From Chrysemys picta bellii (taxonomy: Eukaryota), in NCBI RefSeq assembly GCF_011386835.1, contig NC_088803.1:44950001-45014000 (forward strand): a DNA stretch of 64,000 nucleotides. Reading direction: 5' to 3'. Shown piece by piece: positions 32,480 to 50,533 of the stretch. The translations under genes and the position numbers were made by a program. The notes beneath the pieces were generated by a model that was not told the origin of the DNA, made no database searches, and saw only the letters and a list, made by a program, of their open reading frames with translations. The stretch's first letter is position 1, and every line of letters begins with the position of its first letter.

Positions 32480-33560
32480 CCTGCAGCAGAGCACCCTTCC
32501 CAGCGAGGCGCCCTCCTCTGCCTCGTGAGCTAGTCAGTGGGTGTGATCGCACGGGGGAACAGGCTCTCGCCCTTGGCCCCACCAGACCACGGGTGCTGAA
32601 ACTAGGGGCGTGGCAACACCTCCTTGCTTGAGATTGCTTCCATCATCTACAGGGTTTAGTTTCGTTCAATGGCTTCCCGCACCTCACTATAGAATCTGTT
32701 CCAGTGCCACGAGCCGGGGCCGCTCCCCAGCTTGGCAGTGGCCAGGCTGGGCTCCCAACCTCGGCTCCCCAGGGGCCTCCTCCCGGCCGCGCCTGGACCC
32801 CAGGCGGCTACAGCCCAGGGCCACACCGCACACCTTGTCCCGGGCTACAGACCCTCCGTTCAGGGTCACTGAGGCGCCGCTGCCCCACTAGCGTCTGAGG
32901 CGCTTGCGGCCGCTCCCCGGCAGGAGACTGGGGTATGAGGCAGGCGCGGGCTGGCCGCGAGCAGCCGGTACCTGACACCGGCCTGTCTCCAGTACGCCAC
33001 CATGGCTGCGGTTCCGGGGCCTCAGGGAGCAAACAGCCGGGACCCGCCAGCCCCAAGGTCAGCGCGCACCGGAACAGGAAAGGCCAAGGAACTCGCCGGT
33101 AACCAATCAGAAGCCGCCCCATTTCGCCAATCAACGCTTACATCCCCTCAAGGAACTCGGCCAATCGCAGCCAACGAACTGTTCCCACCAATCGCAACCG
33201 GATTCCTCTGTGCCGCCAATCAGAGTGCGGAGTGACCTGGCGCCGCCCCCCCACCCCATTTGCTGCAGGGTTTGGCAGCGCAGCGGTGCGGGGAAGCGGC
33301 GGGTTCGCGCTTATAGGCAACCAGCGGCCACTGTGCCATCGCCCGCCCACCAAGGGTCCATGGCGCGTCCCGAGCCCCTGCAGGCAGCCCCTTGCCTTGG
33401 GGGCTGAAATCTCACCCAGGCCGAGCCAGTCACCGCGGGGTTGCCAAAGCAGCCCGGGGTTTGCACCCAGCGCTAGTCCCGAGTGGGGCACCCCCCAGTC
33501 CCGCTCAATCCACCTCCAGAGCCCTGACTAGGTTGTGGGAGCATGATAACCCCTGCCTGG
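32480..33560. promoter_or_regulatory. CpG island / ATP5F1E promoter with five CCAAT boxes
   Basis: CpG-rich; CCAAT at 33103, 33127, 33161, 33188 and 33216; ETS-like ccggaa/caggaa near 33069-33081. Confidence 0.8.
32972..33003 (-). CDS. ATP5F1E: ATP synthase F1 subunit epsilon exon 1
   Basis: ATG GTG GCG TAC TGG AGA CAG GCC GGT GTC AG|gtaccg = MVAYWRQAGVS; total CDS 156 nt = 51 aa. Confidence 0.97.
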
Positions 33561-36500
33561 CATCGTTAACCTAAACCCCCACCCTTCTGGCTGAAATCTG
33601 CCTCACCTACTGCTGCCCCAGGTGGCACCCAAGATCTGTGTGGCTGAACGAGATGAGAGGAGAACATGCCTCCCTTTCTGTTTCTTGGTGCATTCAAGAA
33701 TGCTTTGGGGGCAGCTCCACTCTTCCTGATCGATAGCCAATTAGCACCTGATTCAGGGTTCCATAGAGACATAAGAGGCCCACCTACAAGGAACAGCACA
33801 GGATCAGGGCCTTGTGAATATCCCCCTGTTGCTTTGTGTGGGTCTTTAACACAGCAACCAGAGAGAGATAAACCACTAAAATTGGGGGAGGGGGTGTAAG
33901 GGGAGGGGAGGTGTGGTATCCAGAACCACTTCCAGAACTCTCTTGAAACTGACTGGGTTTCAAGTTGACTGTGTTCACTGAAGATTATATTTTTATGAAA
34001 ATGTTGTTTAATGTTCAACAATCTGGGGTTGTTGTTAACCCTAGACACCACAGCCCCAATCCTGGCAACTGGCTCTGGACTGGCAGACCTCTGACCTGCA
34101 TAATGTTCTAAACACTAATGGGGTGCTACATGTGTTCAGAGGTCTGTCTAAAGGGAACCAGTTTCAGGATCAGGGCTTTGGTTTTTCATTTCTAAAACCA
34201 CTGCCAATAACTTGCCTGAAAATCACCAAAAGTTAGGACAAAATAAACAGAAAGGAAACCCTAATTATTTTCTACAAGGCTGGAGAACAGTGGATGGTCT
34301 TATTCATCATCACATAATGACATCTTACATTTATATAACACCTTTCAGTAGGTTTTAGGTTACAACTGACTAAAACATAGCTGAAGCAAACATCTGAGAA
34401 TATGCTTTTATAAAATGCACATAATCCATACCAAGATAATCATACTTGAAGAGATGAAAATTGTTAGCAAAGGTGTCTGCAGACCCTAAAATTCTCCCAC
34501 AATCACTGAGACCTCATCCTTGGGAAAGTGAGGCTTTAAAAGGGTCCTCCTTTAGATACAACAAAAGAAAACTGTCTTTTTTATATTTGTATACTCCTGA
34601 AAACTATACCCATAATTTGCCTAAACATAGACATGGAAAAGGAGGGAAAATATATATCACTAACCAGAAACCCAATCTAATCATTTTCTACAGTGGCCTG
34701 AAAATGGTGGGTTACTTTACATATATAACAACAATAATTAAAAAAATGATGGACCCAAGCATGCCCTCCTGCAAATTGAAGGTCAGAAGTTTGAGGATGA
34801 ATCTCTGAGCCTCCCTTATGGAGCCTGAGCCAAAGCTCATGTAAATCAATCGGAGTAATTTCATTTACTTCAATGGGCCTTGGATCAGACCCATTGAATT
34901 GTTCCACTGAGGTATGTGCATGTGAGTCCCCCACCCCAAAAACAAAACAACAAATTATGGATCCTCTTGGATCAACATGGGTGTAAGGGAATCCCTGAAG
35001 ACCTGTGCCATCCATGCAGATGCGCTGTTCTTCCATGGCTATTCTGAGCTTTGCTGCAGTCTGTCTCCATAGAAGCTACACTGCAAAAATTTCCTCAGCA
35101 GAGACTGCCCCTTGGAATGCCTTTAAAGGAAACTTCTCAAATGTGAAGTGGCTCCACTATGACGTGAAGCCTCAAGCAGATTTACTGCTGGTTGCCTTCC
35201 GAGATGGCCTGCTCCCGGTGCAGGAGTCCTGGGAAGGGGCAGAGACGGTGCTGTGGAGGTGGATTTAAACTGGGCATGATCTGAAAACCAGCCTCTTTCT
35301 CTCATCCTTTCAGAGCTGTTGCCAGAAAAGCAGCATTTGAAAGGTCCATGTTGGAAGCAAAGCCTATTTCGTTCCATCAGAGAGAAGCAGGACACCACCA
35401 CTAGGCAAATCCCTCCAGTAAACATATCAATTAACTTATTAGTGTGTCTGTCTCACACACAGAAGCCTCTACATGGCAAAGAACAGGTCATTTCCAAATG
35501 CACTAGAGCTTCCACTTGGTCTAAAAACCATGACAATAAAAAATCCATACATGATAAGAATGACAACATAGCTTCTCCAGAGTCCAAACTTGAGCTTGGT
35601 GGATAACGCTGATGAAAGATGTGAGATTCACAGTCCTAGAGACATCTATTCATGCATAGATACAGTCTGTTACGCAGCATGTACAGCAAAGGCAGTAAAA
35701 GTGAAAATGTGTCCATTTTGCCACACCAGTGTGCCTGAAAACCCTGTAAGTCTGGAAGGGTGAGTTCACTCTCCCTGCACATTCCCTACTTGACTTTTCC
35801 ATTGAGACTGCTAGCAAGGGTTCCAATTAGTGCCACTAGTGATTACTGTACGTGTTTAAGGTGGACACATATATATGGAACGGAACTTGACCAGCTCATT
35901 TCACCTCAGCCACTAATTTGCTGATTTTTAAGGGTCTACTCAACTGCTTGACCTCAAATGCAGCAGTTGAAGTCAAACTTAATTTTTAAAAGCTTTTATA
36001 AAATAAAAACATCTCACAATTTCTCCTATAATAATTCCACAAAAATTATTATAAAAGAAGCCAACAATCTTCTTTGATGTGTTTATTTTCTTGCTTGGTT
36101 TTTTGCAAGTCATTTTTGCTCTCTTACTTATGAGGCATACATGGCATGTTGGAATAGTTTTCCAGCATGTAAAAAGTAACCTATTACTACAGAAATACAA
36201 ATTCTTTCTACTGAACACTCAGCACTTTGGGCACAGCAGCCAGAGGGAGTGTCAATCAGTCAATATAAAACCCAACAAACTGAACCAACAGCCTGAAAGC
36301 ACAGGTAGTATCCGTGACAGAACGAAAAAGAGCAGGATACCAGGAAGCATTGGAATATGCTCACCTCTATTATGTTTGTGACAATCCTGCCAACAAATGA
36401 GGTGTTGCACAGCTAACTGTTCTATTTGCTAAATCCAAGTCATTTTAGTATTGGTGGGAGAGAAGGAAGGGTTATTTTTAAACTAGGGTTGCTTTGATTT

Positions 36501-37125
36501 GTTACAGCTGGTGATTTTATTTGATAAATACCATAGCTCCAAGCAAGGTCATTTGATGCCTCATGTGTTGCCCAAACCACCAAGACAATTTATTAGGATA
36601 TTAGAAGCCCTGGGCACCTTTATCCCACTAAATGTTCCTCTACTTTTCTCTGTCTTCCCCACACCATCCCGTGCCTGTCTTTCTAGCTCTGTCTCTCCCT
36701 CTTCCTCTTTGGTCTTTCTTTTTTTCATCCTGCTTTGCGCTTTTGTCCATGTCTTTCCTCTCACTGTACATCAGTGTGACATACTACCTGCCTCGACTTG
36801 TGCACACTTTGCTCAAGTTTTGCAGACATGCAAACTGAGTGCAATTATTTGATCATTTAGCCCTTGTGTCATCTGTTGATCTTGGGTAGAAGATGAAAAT
36901 TCAATATGAGCTTTTAAAAAGAGGCAGGGCTCTGAGAGAGGTAGCAGGCTGAGACAGAATGAGGCTTAGTGTATGCACATAAAAGCAGAGCTCTACAAAA
37001 ACTCTATAACATAGATGACTGACTTTTCTGCAGCCATAAACAAGGCACCACTACAGATCTGTACAAACTGTTTTCATACCCAGGGTTGAGTACAATTTAT
37101 AGAACTCTCCCAAACAGGAACTAAT

Positions 37126-37986
37126 TTAAAGAGCTCTGACAGAGAGGTCCTGAGATGCTAAAGAGGTGAGATTGGAAAGGTCCAGAGAAACTGAAGAGGT
37201 GAGAGAAGCGGCATCCTGAAAGGTGAGGTCAGAGAGGTCCAGAAAGGGTGAAGAGATGAGATTAGAAACATCCAGAGAGGTTGATAAGGATAAATCAGAG
37301 GAACGCTGAGATGTTAAAGTGTTAAAATTAGTGAGGTCTAGTGAGGGTGAAGAGGTCGAAGAGGTGAGATCAGATACATTCAGAGAGGGTGAAGAGACTC
37401 CATAAGGAAGGTCCAAGGAAGTTGAAGAGGTATGACTGGAGACGTCTAGGGAGGGTGAAGATGAGAGACTGGAGAGATCCAAGGAGGCAGAAGAAGTGGG
37501 ACTGGAGAGGTCCAAGGATACTGAAGAGCTGGGATTAGAAAGGTCCAGAGAGCCCGAAAAGGTGAGACTGGAAAGGTCCAATGAAACTGAAGAAGTGAGA
37601 CTGGAGAGTTGCAAGGAATCTGAAGATGTGAGACTGGAGAGCTCCAAGGAAAGTGAAGTGGTGATGCTGGAGACATCCAGAGAGGCCAAAGAGCTGCAAC
37701 TAGAGAGGTCCAGAGAAGATGAAGAGGCGAGATCAGAGAGGTCCAGGGAGGATGAAGAAGTGTTGCTTGAGAGGTCCAAAGAATCTGAGGAGCTGAGACT
37801 GGAGAGGTCCAATGAATCTGAAAAGGTGAGTTTGGAAAGTTCTAAGGAGGCTGAAGACTCAAAAATGGAGGGGTCCAGGGAGGCCAAAAAGGTGAGACCA
37901 TGGAGATCCAGGGAGACTGAAGAGACTGAAAAGCCAAGTAAATCCACAAAATGATTGGCGTTTTATACGATCGTAGGCAGGTTCAG
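37126..37986 (-). CDS. Candidate large exon encoding a Ser/Leu/Asp decapeptide repeat (SLDLSSLTSS)n
   Basis: 30-nt degenerate tandem repeat; one - strand frame is open for 273 codons; the conserved Leu is encoded by CTG, TTG, CTA and TTA; acceptor ttttag| ends at 37987 but is one base out of frame with the repeat ORF. Confidence 0.55.
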
Positions 37987-38146
37987 CTAAAACTCTCCAA
38001 CAATTAAAATGCTAAGAAAATATAAAACAATGAGAACATGAAAACCAATTAATATTACTACTGAAAGTAACTAAACACAGATTTCACTCTGGGAGTTTAA
38101 TCAACTAAATTCTAATATTATAAGCTCACAACATGATCCCTTAGAA

Positions 38147-38400
38147 CAGTGGTTTCCAAAGTGGGGTGCGCAAGAGGATCCTTGGGGTGCGCGGCAGGAG
38201 GAGCGCTATTTTTGTTTGTTTGTTTTGTTTGTTTTTTTGCTTTTTTGCTTTGTCAGTTCGGGCGGGAGTCCGAGTGGCTTTTTTTTTTCTTTTTCTTTTT
38301 TTGCTTCGGCAAAAATGGTAGAGCTGGTGTGGCAGGGGGTGCGTGCTCAAAATCTTTTTACTGATAGGGGTGCGTGATCAAAAAAGTTTGGAGACCACTG
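38147..38400. mobile_element. hAT MITE
   Basis: TIRs cagtggtttccaaa / tttggagaccactg; TSD ccttagaa / ccttaaaa (7 of 8). Confidence 0.85.
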
Positions 38401-41087
38401 CCTTAAAATATTAGCATTTCCTAGAATCCCAGACAAGTAAATGCATAGAAGCATTTGTGCATCAGTATGTATCTGTCTTTCTAAGTGTATCTATGTCTCT
38501 AGACCATAGTATGTGCAAAATCTTAGCACAGGACCCTCCAAATACCCTCCTGTTACATACACAAGCTCATCACCTGCCCTGATGATTTAAAATAAAATCA
38601 TAATTAAATAAGAGAATGAAAGTTACTAAACCTTCTTTTCAACTTCTGGTCTCCAGATACCAGAGGGCATTCAGATGCCATAGTGATTAGAGCGGAATAA
38701 ATGCCATTGTAGACAGATAGGTTTTTAATGGCTTACAGTTAAAACAAATATGTAGTTGTAAATGGCAAGTGTGAGTCCTACTTGGCCTATCACTATAAAG
38801 ATATGATGGATCATTTCTTTCTCATCTGAATCAATGCTGAGAGAGGCAGCATACTTCAGCAAAGTGCATCTCCTTGAGGACATTAATAGAGATGGAAAAG
38901 AAAATAGTAATTCTCTCAGCAATAAGTATTGATTTATTTTGGGGGGCAATGTCATTCCAAATTGCCTTCACAACTAATTAAGAAACGTATTGAAAAGGTC
39001 TGGCAGCTTCTGTTATGCTCTTTTATTTATTTTATATACTGGTCCCATCTGATCACTTGTTATTTTTTTCTTTGGGTGTAATTCTTAATAAAATAATGAT
39101 GATCTTTAATTTGTGGGCACTCTGGCTGCCTTAATAAACTACTGAAGAGATCAATTATGATAAAAAGACAATACATCCATTTTAATCCTGAGAATAAAGT
39201 TTGGCAAATGCTCAGCAAAACCACAGAACATAAGCAATGTATAGCTGAAAAGGGAACTGAAAACTTCAGATTCTAGTTCAGAATGGTGCCTTTAATATAG
39301 TTTGGGATAGATCACAAGATGGAAATTCTGCAGGCCCCGCTCCTAGCCCCTCAAGACTGCACAGCAAGACAGTCAGCAGTTCCAATCTTACTGACACCAG
39401 TTGTCATGATGGGACACATGGCAAGAGATGTATTTAAAAAAAAATCATTACAAACATATATTCACTCACAGTTGTGTTCAAACACAGTATAATGGGCCAG
39501 GACATGTAAAGCATGCACTCATGATGCAAGGCTGCAGTTTCTCAGGTGGTTAGGAACACAACTGAACTTTGTCTGTATCATCGTCTGACTGAGGGGCAGA
39601 CACACGCATAATTGATTTAACATCATCACTCCCACTAAGTGAAGAGAAGTCAACAGGAGTTTAGTTGTAGCATGTACAGACTAAGGACCACAGGAATTTG
39701 GCACAATATGAAAAATATTTAATTCTACAAAATAAAATCCACATATGCAACAACACAAGGCCTAAACAATACTGAATTACCAAATAAACTTTACATTTAT
39801 TTTTAATAAACCTGTGATTTTAGAGGTCATCCAATATAATTGTCATTTTATCAAGTGTACACAGTATATGGATCAGGATGGCAAAATACATGAAAATCTC
39901 TTGCCACACAGGTTTCAGTAGTGTTTATGATGAGCATATAAATATGCTCACTCTCCTTCTTCCCTTGCACACTATGATGAAACAACAAAAATTATGAACC
40001 ATCCCTGAGAAATCCTTTCCCATCTAACGAATAAGGATCCATCATTCTGTGACTCTCTCTCTCTTCAGATTAAAAAGTTTCACGCATGCACATTACAATA
40101 GAAAACAAATAATTATAACTAAGCTAATCGCAACACAATGAAAAGCCGGTGTTGACATGATTTCCAACACACTACAGATTCCAGTGTCCCTTCACTGTGT
40201 CTCTTCTGCATTTGTTTAGAGTGGCAAAGCTACTCTGTTTTTCCTGTGAAATGACACACATTGGAGAAACATGGAAGCATAGTCATTACTGCACAGAACA
40301 TAGAGAGCGCTTTAATAATACTTCATACCTTCTCTAGTTGTGGATTTGTCACCTTTCTTCCCTAGTGTGAGCCATATTGGGCCCTGCTGTTAAAGCTCTG
40401 CTGTGCTTCCTGAAAATGACCCTAATCTGTTCAACAGCTACTGGAAATCATGCCATGCTGATTAAAATACAGGTAATCTTCTGGTAAATCCCTTACTGCC
40501 GCAATGAAGCACTCAGCATGGAGCACTAGTACATAATACTGTATTCTGAAATCATCTACACTTTTAATGTAAGGTTGCAGTTCTGTATTGTTTTCTGTTA
40601 CAGAGCTAGATGTTGGAGATGAGCTGGTGATGTGGATGAACCCATTAGGTGTTTTTTAACTTTTGGACATTTGGATTCAACGCCTGGTTTAGACTGTAAG
40701 TAAAAATGACTTTGGCAGTGAAATTCTAATTTTCAGTTGTCCACTCTGCAAATTAGACACAATTTGGCAGGCTTGGCTGACTATTCTCAGTCTAGAGAGC
40801 CGTAGGTTTGGCATAATAAGGAAATTGTGGGTCAGGATTCAGTCCACATTTACTAGTTACAAATAACTATTGTAAATGATGATAATGACTTTTCCTTGTT
40901 CTTTTAATTTAAAATATATTTAACGGTCTTATGCCCTGTCTGTTGTAATATAACATAATAATATAGGGTTTTTTTCCATAAATGTCAAAGCGTTTTACAG
41001 AAGATAGTAAATAACACTGGGTACAATTTACTAAAGCACCTACGTGACTTAAGAGCCTCATCAAAAGCAACTAAGACACTTAGGTGT

Positions 41088-50407: not shown

Positions 50408-50533
<126 letters not shown>

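What the first reader, a model, noticed from the sequence alone, without database searches (positions are those of the whole stretch)
37126..37947. A 30-bp minisatellite evolving like a coding exon: (SLDLSSLTSS)n, 273 codons
Seen: roughly two dozen degenerate 10-codon units. Only one - strand frame is stop-free end to end; the mirrored + frame has five stops between 37150 and 37440. At the conserved S-L-D/E core the Leu is CTG, TTG, CTA (37441-37450) or TTA (37838-37847) and the acid alternates GAC/GAT/GAG/GAA, i.e. mostly synonymous or conservative change. Caveat: a pyrimidine-rich strand is naturally poor in stop codons. Inference: a Ser-rich low-complexity protein, either mucin-like (O-glycosylated) or, given the repeated S-x-D/E, a candidate secretory-kinase (FAM20C-type) phosphoprotein such as those of mineralised or egg matrices.
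Basis: partly seen in the sequence, partly recalled or inferred. Interest (0 to 1): 0.75.

Follow-up and report, generated by a model that had tools for sequence, protein, structure and literature searches.

The report
Ancient unannotated serine-rich repeat gene exon
What looked like a minisatellite in the painted turtle is a protein-coding repeat (about 24 units of 11 amino acids, S-L-D-L-S-S-L-T-S-S-x). Turtles, birds and a lizard have all kept it in one reading frame for roughly 280 million years, yet no genome annotation or protein database searched here contains it.

Summary
The repeat is real, but its period is 33 bp (11 codons), not 30. There are 17 units in perfect register plus degenerate edge units, about 24 in all. 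The minus frame is open for 278 codons stop to stop.

The plus-strand frame (LERSKESEEVR type) shares the same wobble position.

I fetched the orthologous locus upstream of ATP5F1E from 13 turtles, two birds and a lizard. The array sits there in all 16, unit for unit.
- The S-L-D frame has no stop in any of the six species counted frame by frame; the other five frames have 4-42.
- 16 of 17 indels between clades are multiples of three.
- Mismatches follow position 2 < 1 < 3.
- dN/dS is about 0.3-0.4, with dS near neutral.

So this is a coding sequence on the minus strand, at least as old as the turtle/bird-lizard split.

What remains open:
- The frame has no Met.
- I found no upstream coding exon.
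- No CDS is annotated on this strand in any of the 16 loci.
- A search of 1.84 billion protein representatives found no orthologue.
- The mucin or FAM20C reading is untested.

The parts
37129..37817 (-). Best-supported coding part: about 229 codons of the 11-residue repeat (S-L-D-L-S-S-L-T-S-S-x), running from a conserved phase-1 acceptor to the last sense codon.
   Evidence: The 3-periodic divergence is strong from codon 54 onward. The acceptor (Y)nTTTTCAG|AT is conserved at the same place in turtles, birds and the lizard. dN/dS is 0.28-0.40 between clades. This frame has no stops in six species, against 4-42 in the other frames.
37126..37128 (-). TAA stop codon that ends the frame (...DLSVRAL*).
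   Evidence: The same C-terminus and stop are kept in emydids, Mauremys, Chelydra and sea turtles. The tail differs in Gopherus, Emydura, Pelodiscus, the birds and the lizard.
37818..37962 (-). 5' part of the open frame, made of degenerate units. Its status is uncertain: it may be coding, or it may be the intron end and acceptor region.
   Evidence: Codons 1-21 show no third-position excess and codons 22-53 only a weak one. The frame-breaking indels on the 5' side all lie here: +1 nt in Gopherus, 5 nt between birds and turtles, and 1 nt between the two birds. An in-frame stop sits just upstream in every species.
37409..37923 (.). The 33-bp tandem array as Tandem Repeats Finder called it.
   Evidence: period 33, 15.6 copies, 69% matches, 0% indels. 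The 66-bp period scores slightly higher.
37963..38077 (-). Conserved T-rich non-coding stretch directly upstream of the frame, with acceptor-like sites and the TTGTGGATTTA motif.
   Evidence: The turtle-bird blastn alignment starts about 115 nt before the frame. No frame is conserved here, and short hydrophobic mini-ORFs appear in all clades.
39290..39299 (-). Candidate TATA box (TATATTAAAG) inside a conserved block at 39248-39314. This may be the promoter of the gene.
   Evidence: The block aligns at 76% between turtles and birds, where it reads ACTATAATTAG. It is conserved in most turtles, but Chelydra carries a 9-bp deletion that removes its last four bases. Its function is inferred only.
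39608..39629 (-). Deeply conserved AT-rich motif, GGTGAT(G/T)ATGTTAAATCAATTAT, about 330 nt upstream of the TATA-like box.
   Evidence: It matches Lacerta over 22 nt at 95% and is also present in birds and turtles. A regulatory role is inferred.
36824..37083 (-). Conserved sequence downstream of the stop codon, probably 3' UTR.
   Evidence: It aligns with birds at 65-87%.
36520..36594 (-). AATAAA (36594-36589) followed by a GU-rich stretch. This is the candidate 3' end of the transcript.
   Evidence: The AATAAA and the TGGTGGTTTGGG stretch are conserved in the five turtles compared, including Emydura. The downstream block also aligns with birds.

Best explanation
The array is most likely the large, probably terminal, coding exon of an unannotated gene. 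The gene lies between PRELID3B and ATP5F1E and would be transcribed on the same (minus) strand. It encodes an acidic protein with almost no lysine or arginine: 36% Ser, 22% Leu, 10% Asp, pI about 4. The protein consists of about 24 units of 11 residues, S-L-D-L-S-S-L-T-S-S-x.

Shown here:
- The repeat domain already existed in the common ancestor of turtles, birds and lizards.
- It has since evolved unit by unit under moderate purifying selection on this one frame.

Inferred:
- The coding part probably starts at a conserved phase-1 splice acceptor at 37818/37817. It would then need an upstream exon that supplies the start codon.
- Phase-1 junctions are typical just after signal-peptide exons. 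Together with the Ser- and Asp-rich composition, this makes a secreted, heavily serine-modified (phosphorylated or O-glycosylated) matrix-type protein my preferred function. That function is a guess.
For: Orthology and age:
- Orthologous loci came from ATP5F1E look-ups.
- The array is present in the same place and orientation in 13 turtles, two birds and Lacerta.

Reading frame:
- The S-L-D frame is open for 278 codons in 7 turtles and 256-300 in three others. It is open for 291 and 295 codons in the birds and 291 in the lizard. The best other frame reaches 111-194 codons.
- Stops per frame are 0 against 4-42.

Substitution pattern:
- Codon alignment gives dS 0.63-0.75 and dN 0.23-0.27 for turtle-bird, and dS 1.5 with omega 0.28 for bird-lizard.
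- In a frame-blind nucleotide alignment, mismatch rates at positions 1/2/3 are 0.24/0.17/0.35 (p=8e-6) and 0.36/0.30/0.52 (p=7e-7). 16 of 17 indels are multiples of three.
- Within durocryptodire turtles there are 139 parsimony substitutions, split 48/26/65 by position. 60 are synonymous against 43.1 expected (P=0.0015), and there are 0 new stops against 3.0 expected.
- The antisense frame collects stops at the neutral rate: 5 observed against 4.8-6.6 simulated.

Gene structure:
- A conserved acceptor and conserved promoter-like and polyA-like blocks are present.
Against: - There is no Met in the frame in the species whose frame I read, apart from one internal Met in each of the two birds. An in-frame stop lies just upstream.
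- Crude scans found no ATG exon with a usable donor within about 5 kb upstream.
- No CDS is annotated on this strand in any of the 16 loci.
- HMMER against 1.84 billion representatives found no orthologue.
- Contig sets of four small runs hold 98-100% of the sampled words of 36900-38200, flanks included. If those runs are RNA, that suggests unspliced RNA here.
- Across the 13 turtles the array changes about as fast as its upstream flank (0.356 against 0.323 substitutions per site).
- Emydura has a 2-nt deletion that cuts off the last ~55 codons, and Pelodiscus has lost about 50 codons.
Confidence: 0.72

Rival explanations
1. The array is a conserved non-coding element. It could be an exon of a long non-coding RNA, or a DNA element, whose pyrimidine-rich 33-nt units bind a factor. 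On this view the open frame is a by-product of a stop-poor pyrimidine strand.
For: - The frame has no start codon, no upstream coding exon was found, and no annotation pipeline calls a CDS on this strand.
- The flanks appear to be held in the same small contig sets.
- The first 21 codons are conserved without any 3-periodicity.
- The array changes about as fast as its flank within turtles.
Against: A unit-level binding constraint predicts 33-nt periodicity, not a 3-nt one that follows the genetic code.
- Position 2 changes least and position 3 most.
- Leu varies only within YTR.
- Asp mostly varies as GAY.
- 16 of 17 indels between clades are multiples of three.
- The two other frames on the same pyrimidine-rich strand carry 5-15 stops, against 0 in this one.
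- dS is near neutral while dN is about a third of it.
Confidence: 0.15
2. It was a coding exon in the sauropsid ancestor, but in turtles it is now a relaxed or decaying relic that slow turtle evolution has not yet broken.
For: - Pairwise omega within turtles is higher and noisy, 0.38-0.88.
- The array's rate equals the flank's.
- Emydura has a frameshift, Pelodiscus has large deletions, and the C-terminus has changed in Gopherus.
Against: - Within durocryptodires there is still a synonymous excess (P=0.0015), a 48/26/65 split by codon position, and 0 new stops against 3.0 expected.
- 10 of 13 turtles keep the full frame.
- 9 of about 13 indels that are not whole units are multiples of three, against 7 of 20 in the flanks.
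Confidence: 0.1
3. The coding strand is the plus strand. It would encode a charged 11-mer repeat (LERSKESEEVR type), as in the 113-residue CDS called in Mauremys mutica.
For: - This frame shares the wobble position, so it shows the same pN/pS among units (0.49).
- It is open for 172 codons in Chrysemys and contains ATG codons.
- A CDS in this frame is on record for Mauremys (L006 5345-5686, minus strand of the locus).
Against: - It carries 4-8 stops across the array in every species checked.
- Its longest open stretch is 111 codons in birds.
- Stops accumulate at the simulated neutral rate.
- Its synonymous excess is weaker: P=0.07 among units and 0.0145 among species.
- The word search found no relative.
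Confidence: 0.03

Closest known systems
Acidic serine-rich repeat phosphoproteins of mineralised and egg matrices (SCPP family such as DSPP and DMP1, and phosvitin), which are substrates of the secretory kinase FAM20C
   Same: It is an extreme Ser- and Asp-rich, very acidic, low-complexity repeat protein. It has 20-23 S-x-D/E motifs, and most of the protein sits in one large exon.
   Different: - It lies between PRELID3B and ATP5F1E, not in the SCPP cluster.
- The motif is mainly S-L-D rather than S-x-E.
- The likely acceptor is phase 1, whereas SCPP genes, as I recall them, use phase-0 introns.
- No signal peptide was found, and it is rich in Leu.
- There is no detectable sequence relative.
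Mucin-type PTS tandem-repeat domains
   Same: It is a tandem repeat encoded in one large exon. Ser plus Thr make up about 43% of residues, and the repeat evolves faster than typical globular domains.
   Different: - It is poor in proline (2-6%) and has 14-22% Leu.
- Repeat number and unit identity have stayed fixed for about 280 million years, instead of the rapid turnover typical of mucin VNTRs.
- No signal peptide or flanking mucin domains were seen.
Leucine-rich repeat (LRR) proteins
   Same: The core L-D-L-S-S-L/N mimics the LRR strand motif LxLxxN. The best database hits are LRR proteins with 22-residue units (E=4e-36 for P0002, carrying Pfam LRR_EndoS, LRR_Zer-1 and LRR_4). The 66-bp period equals two units.
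   Different: - The unit is 11 residues, about half the shortest LRR. The second, variable half of an LRR is missing.
- The Pfam LRR score is 14.5 bits against a cut-off of 27.9.
- The AlphaFold model is of low confidence (pLDDT 56.8), and Foldseek finds nothing better than E=0.7.
Non-coding minisatellites (VNTRs)
   Same: Head-to-tail units of 33 bp with degenerate edges.
   Different: There is no homogenisation or copy-number flux. Units are orthologous across clades, and substitutions follow the genetic code.

Membership tests
Protein-coding exon (general) | The reading frame is kept open in distant relatives while other frames are not. | tested here: met
   0 stops against 4-42 in the other frames in six species. 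The frame is open for 291-295 codons in birds and the lizard.
Protein-coding exon (general) | Substitutions are biased to synonymous sites and indels to multiples of three. | tested here: met
   omega is 0.28-0.40 between clades. Mismatch rates follow position 2 < 1 < 3 with p down to 7e-7, and 16 of 17 indels are multiples of three.
Protein-coding exon (general) | A start codon, or a splice junction to an exon that carries one. | tested here: not met
   There is no Met in the frame and an in-frame stop lies upstream. A phase-1 acceptor is conserved at 37818/37817, but no ATG exon with a donor was found in about 5 kb. The scans used a simple weight matrix.
Protein-coding exon (general) | Transcription of the coding strand, and translation. 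| not testable with these tools
Run kinds are only guesses.
SCPP / FAM20C-substrate phosphoproteins | Gene located in the SPARCL1-linked SCPP cluster. | tested here: not met
   The locus is CTSZ-TUBB1-ATP5F1E-[array]-PRELID3B.
SCPP / FAM20C-substrate phosphoproteins | N-terminal signal peptide and S-x-E motifs. | tested here: inconclusive
   There are 20-23 S-x-D/E motifs, mostly S-L-D. No signal peptide exon was identified. The hydrophobic mini-ORFs upstream are not joined in frame.
Mucin PTS domain | Repeats rich in Pro, Thr and Ser, with variable copy number. | tested here: not met
   Ser is 34-36% and Thr 6-7%, but Pro is only 2-6% and Leu 14-22%. Copy number is nearly static.
Leucine-rich repeat | Units of about 20-30 residues that match an LRR profile above its threshold and fold as a solenoid. 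| tested here: not met
   The unit is 11 residues. Pfam LRR_EndoS scores 14.5 bits against a cut-off of 27.9. There is no significant fold match.
Hypervariable minisatellite | Rapid gain and loss of units and homogenisation among them. | tested here: not met
   Only four whole-unit events (66, 66, 66 and 99 bp) occurred among 13 turtles. Units align one to one with birds and the lizard.

The most novel reading that the evidence does not exclude
This is a protein family new to science, kept by all sauropsids sampled and absent from every protein database searched. It would be translated from a frame that has no AUG, either by non-canonical initiation on an unspliced RNA or through a cryptic micro-exon. 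It would fold as a short-period (11- or 22-residue) beta-solenoid rather than staying disordered.
Probability: 0.1. Interest if true: 0.85.

Novelty: new variant of a known kind. Interest (0 to 1): 0.7.

Why it matters
If it is translated, this is a roughly 280-million-year-old gene of birds and reptiles that annotation pipelines have missed. Three properties could explain why.
- Its conserved frame has no start codon.
- It is low-complexity.
- It has only 2-4 Lys or Arg residues, so tryptic proteomics would hardly see it.

One annotation (Mauremys) appears to have called the wrong strand. The locus also shows that an apparent minisatellite can be a frozen, unit-by-unit conserved protein domain. 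It offers a concrete test case for finding missing sauropsid genes by codon-aware comparison. The human PRELID3B-ATP5F1E gap is about 1 kb (from memory, not tested here), which suggests the gene is absent at this position in mammals. The same neighbourhood holds the extra Aurora kinase reported earlier.

Tried and rejected
**Read laying.** I asked for 35000-40999 on four runs. There is therefore no depth, strand or splice evidence.

**Protein searches**
- The word searches of both frames found one weak LRR hit for the minus frame and nothing for the plus frame.
- HMMER over 1.84 billion representatives returned only periodic look-alikes: LRR proteins, and an unrelated protein with SLDVTGNTSSx 11-mers.
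- Pfam gave nothing above its cut-offs.

**Other local checks**
- A transposon origin was considered. I found no terminal inverted repeats and no other copy of the unit or the flanks in the window.
- Rfam gave nothing.
- Earlier findings searched by sequence and by words gave nothing relevant.

**Upstream exon hunt**
- A scan for an ATG, a hydrophobic core and a phase-1 donor found none.
- Scans for any ATG-ORF donor between the TATA-like box and the array, and across 5 kb upstream, found none in turtle or birds. One weak site turned up in Lacerta.
- PRELID3B donors, read by eye, are in phases 2, 0, 0, 2 and 0. None fits the phase-1 acceptor.
That frame has stops in birds.

**Upstream mini-ORFs.** Hydrophobic mini-ORFs lie upstream (MFSLFYIFLAF... 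in turtles, MSFWLVLACY in birds). I rejected them as a signal peptide, because they end in stops, lie in varying frames, and sit in a T-rich tract that encodes hydrophobic residues in any frame.

**Structure.** The AlphaFold model was too weak to use.

**Literature.** Two searches found no description of a gene between PRELID3B and ATP5F1E. A synteny list in bioRxiv 10.64898/2026.05.15.725496 names none.

Full report
**The observation.** The stretch 37126-37947 is a degenerate tandem array, but the period is 33 bp, not 30. Tandem Repeats Finder reports 15.6 indel-free copies over 37409-37923 at 69% matches, with a 66-bp period scoring slightly higher.

On the minus strand the unit is 11 codons, S-L-D-L-S-S-L-T-S-S-x. 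Seventeen units stand in perfect register. The degenerate remainder differs only by a +9 bp and a -9 bp indel. The minus frame has 0 stops and the other five frames have 5-31. The stop-to-stop frame is 278 codons (37129-37962). That makes it the longest open frame in the 17-kb gap between ATP5F1E and PRELID3B. It contains no Met.

**Context.** An earlier finding names the genome as painted turtle. Locus L002 from the Chrysemys picta assembly matches the window at 100%.

The window carries these genes:
- CTSZ on the minus strand;
- TUBB1 on the plus strand;
- ATP5F1E on the minus strand, with its ATG at 33003 and a CpG island at 32501-33500;
- PRELID3B on the minus strand, with its stop near 50440;
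- an Aurora-like kinase.

The array lies about 4 kb upstream of ATP5F1E, on the same strand as both neighbours.

Among units, codons 1-5 vary mostly at position 3 and at the synonymous first position of Leu, and hardly at position 2. pN/pS among units is 0.50 in the S-L-D frame.

The plus-strand frame (LERSKESEEVR type, open for 172 codons) uses the same wobble position and scores 0.49. The other four frames score 0.98-1.35. Third-position excess therefore cannot identify the strand.

Finer tests lean to the minus frame.
- The synonymous share is 0.43 against 0.26 expected (P=0.0003). For the plus frame it is 0.29 against 0.23 (P=0.07).
- The plus frame holds 5 stops where a neutral-decay simulation expects 4.8-6.6.
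- The minus frame holds 0 where 2.4-3.4 are expected (P=0.03-0.08).

Units are related to one another, so these within-array tests are only suggestive. A conservative count gives p=0.015.

**Databases.** The word search found one weak LRR hit for the minus frame and nothing for the plus frame. Pfam gave nothing above its cut-offs.

HMMER over 1.84 billion representatives gave 108 hits. All are at 13-40% identity, and the six I inspected are periodic look-alikes:
- LRR proteins with 22-residue units of the type LDLSxCxxLxxLxL;
- an unrelated protein with SLDVTGNTSSx 11-mers.

No orthologue appeared. That library does hold RefSeq turtle, bird and lizard proteins, as the ATP5F1E search showed.

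**Reads.** The look-up of sequencing runs listed four small contig sets of the same organism that hold 98-100% of the sampled words of 36900-38200, flanks included. Two related organisms hold 38-63%, and six other runs of the species hold none. All run kinds are guesses.

I therefore have no depth, strand or splice evidence. After that I sent none of those letters to any search tool. There was one lapse inside the sandbox: the local BLAST query (L002 3001-9000) spanned the L002 copy of those places. I masked them from then on.

**Orthologous loci.** I searched ATP5F1E by its second coding exon alone, by reference, and built no joined model. I listed the turtle members of the clusters and fetched each gene with 10-kb flanks.

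The array is present at the same place and in the same orientation in all of these:
- Trachemys, Chrysemys, Malaclemys, Emys, Terrapene, Mauremys, Gopherus and Chelydra;
- Dermochelys and two cheloniid sea turtles;
- Pelodiscus and Emydura (80-98% identity);
- two birds (73-75% over 810-940 bp) and Lacerta agilis (72% over 651 bp).

**Frame conservation.** The S-L-D frame has these open lengths:
- 278 codons in seven turtles;
- 273 in Mauremys, from in-frame deletions;
- 256 in Dermochelys and 300 in one sea turtle, from changes of two whole units;
- 286 in Gopherus, where a 1-nt insertion near codon 24 alters the start;
- 221 in Emydura, from a 2-nt deletion;
- 198 in Pelodiscus, from several in-frame deletions and a diverged tail.

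In the birds it is open for 291 and 295 codons and in the lizard for 291. The best other frame there reaches 111-163 codons. Across six species the frame has 0 stops, against 4-42 in every other frame.

**Substitution pattern among turtles.** Among eleven durocryptodire turtles, parsimony gives 139 substitutions split 48/26/65 by codon position. 60 are synonymous where 43.1 are expected when the same changes are moved to random sites of the same base (P=0.0015). There are 0 new stops against 3.0 expected.

**Substitution pattern between clades.** Values are.

| Comparison | dS | dN | omega | Mismatch rate at positions 1/2/3 |
|---|---|---|---|---|
| turtle-bird | 0.63-0.75 | 0.23-0.27 | 0.33-0.40 | 0.24/0.17/0.35 (p=8e-6) |
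| turtle-lizard | 0.80-0.91 | 0.26-0.27 | about 0.3 | 0.29/0.21/0.41 |
| bird-lizard | 1.5 | 0.41-0.43 | 0.28 | 0.36/0.30/0.52 (p=7e-7) |

The mismatch rates come from a nucleotide alignment made without regard to frame. In that alignment 16 of 17 indels are multiples of three.

Synonymous sites thus drift at roughly the neutral pace while replacement sites are held back. This is the signature of a translated sequence under moderate constraint. It is not the signature of an RNA or DNA element, whose constraint would follow the 33-nt unit rather than the genetic code.

Units align one to one across clades. The domain was therefore complete in the sauropsid ancestor and has been almost static since. 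It is not a minisatellite in the dynamic sense.

**Where the coding part starts.** The 3-periodicity is absent in codons 1-21, weak in 22-53 and strong from 54 onward.

One acceptor, (Y)nTTTTCAG|AT, is conserved at the same place and in phase 1 in turtles, birds and the lizard. In the window the exon would start at 37817. All the frame-breaking indels on the 5' side lie upstream of it:
- +1 nt in Gopherus;
- 5 nt between birds and turtles;
- 1 nt between the two birds.

I therefore take 37817-37129 as the coding exon and 37818-37962 as uncertain.

**What is missing.** An in-frame stop precedes the frame in every species, and the frame has no Met. Simple weight-matrix scans found no ATG exon with a usable donor in the 5 kb upstream.

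None of the 16 loci has a CDS on this strand. Mauremys has a 113-residue CDS called on the opposite strand, in the LERS frame, which I consider a wrong-strand call.

Conserved non-coding blocks suggest a compact gene:
- a TATA-like box at 39299-39290, shared by turtles and birds;
- a 22-nt AT-rich motif at about 39629-39608, also shared with the lizard;
- AATAAA at 36594-36589 followed by a GU-rich stretch.

**Protein properties.** The protein is 36% Ser, 22% Leu and 10% Asp. It has 3 Lys+Arg, 30 Asp+Glu, pI about 4, and 22 S-x-D/E motifs.

AlphaFold on a nine-sequence alignment gives pLDDT 56.8 and pTM 0.55, with short strands about every 11 residues. Foldseek finds nothing better than E=0.7. 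I draw no fold conclusion.

A secreted, serine-modified matrix-type protein is my preferred function. It rests only on composition and on the phase-1 junction.

**Verdict.** The functional class is open.

The rivals rank as follows:
- a conserved non-coding RNA or DNA element (0.15);
- a relic relaxed in turtles (0.10);
- plus-strand coding (0.03).

Noticed in passing
window 40101-40680 and 39775-39886 (minus strand): Two blocks are conserved between turtles and birds, and the first also with the lizard, but neither has a conserved reading frame. The second holds a conserved AATAAA. Together they look like the distal end of a very long PRELID3B 3' UTR or an alternative terminal exon. A 218-residue gene model in Pelodiscus ends inside the first block (L013, up to 4670).
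   Followed up: partly
L006 5345-5686, minus strand of the locus (Mauremys mutica): The record for this assembly carries a 113-residue CDS in the antisense (LERS) frame of the array. The frame comparison here suggests the wrong strand and frame were called.
   Followed up: partly
window 38004-38039 (minus strand), and the homologous places in birds and the lizard: A short ATG-initiated hydrophobic mini-ORF lies 60-90 nt upstream of the repeat frame in the turtles and birds, and about 24 nt upstream in the lizard. It reads MFSLFYIFLAF* in turtles and MSFWLVLACY* in birds. In Lacerta it reads MSLDCQIILWIYL* and is in frame with the repeat, separated by a single TAA. It may be an artefact of a T-rich tract, a uORF, or part of an unresolved 5' exon.
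   Followed up: partly
window 37937-37950 (minus strand): The motif TTGTGGATTTA is identical in turtles, birds and the lizard, although it falls in different frames relative to the repeat. It is therefore conserved as DNA or RNA, not as protein. Its function is unknown.
   Followed up: no
L012 (a cheloniid sea turtle assembly, GCA_965152275.1): An intronless ATP5F1E copy sits inside a BRSK-type kinase gene. It is probably a retrocopy with an intact 51-residue frame.
   Followed up: no
L001 and L003, about 270 bp inserted roughly 160 bp downstream of the repeat's stop codon: Trachemys and Malaclemys share an insertion that Chrysemys, Emys and Terrapene lack. It is a clade marker within the deirochelyine turtles.
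   Followed up: no
window 37126-37947 (minus strand): Most of the well-preserved units carry TCTTCAG or a close variant, which looks like a 3' splice site. These sites are all in phase 1 and 33 nt apart, so using alternative acceptors would add or drop whole units in frame.
   Followed up: no
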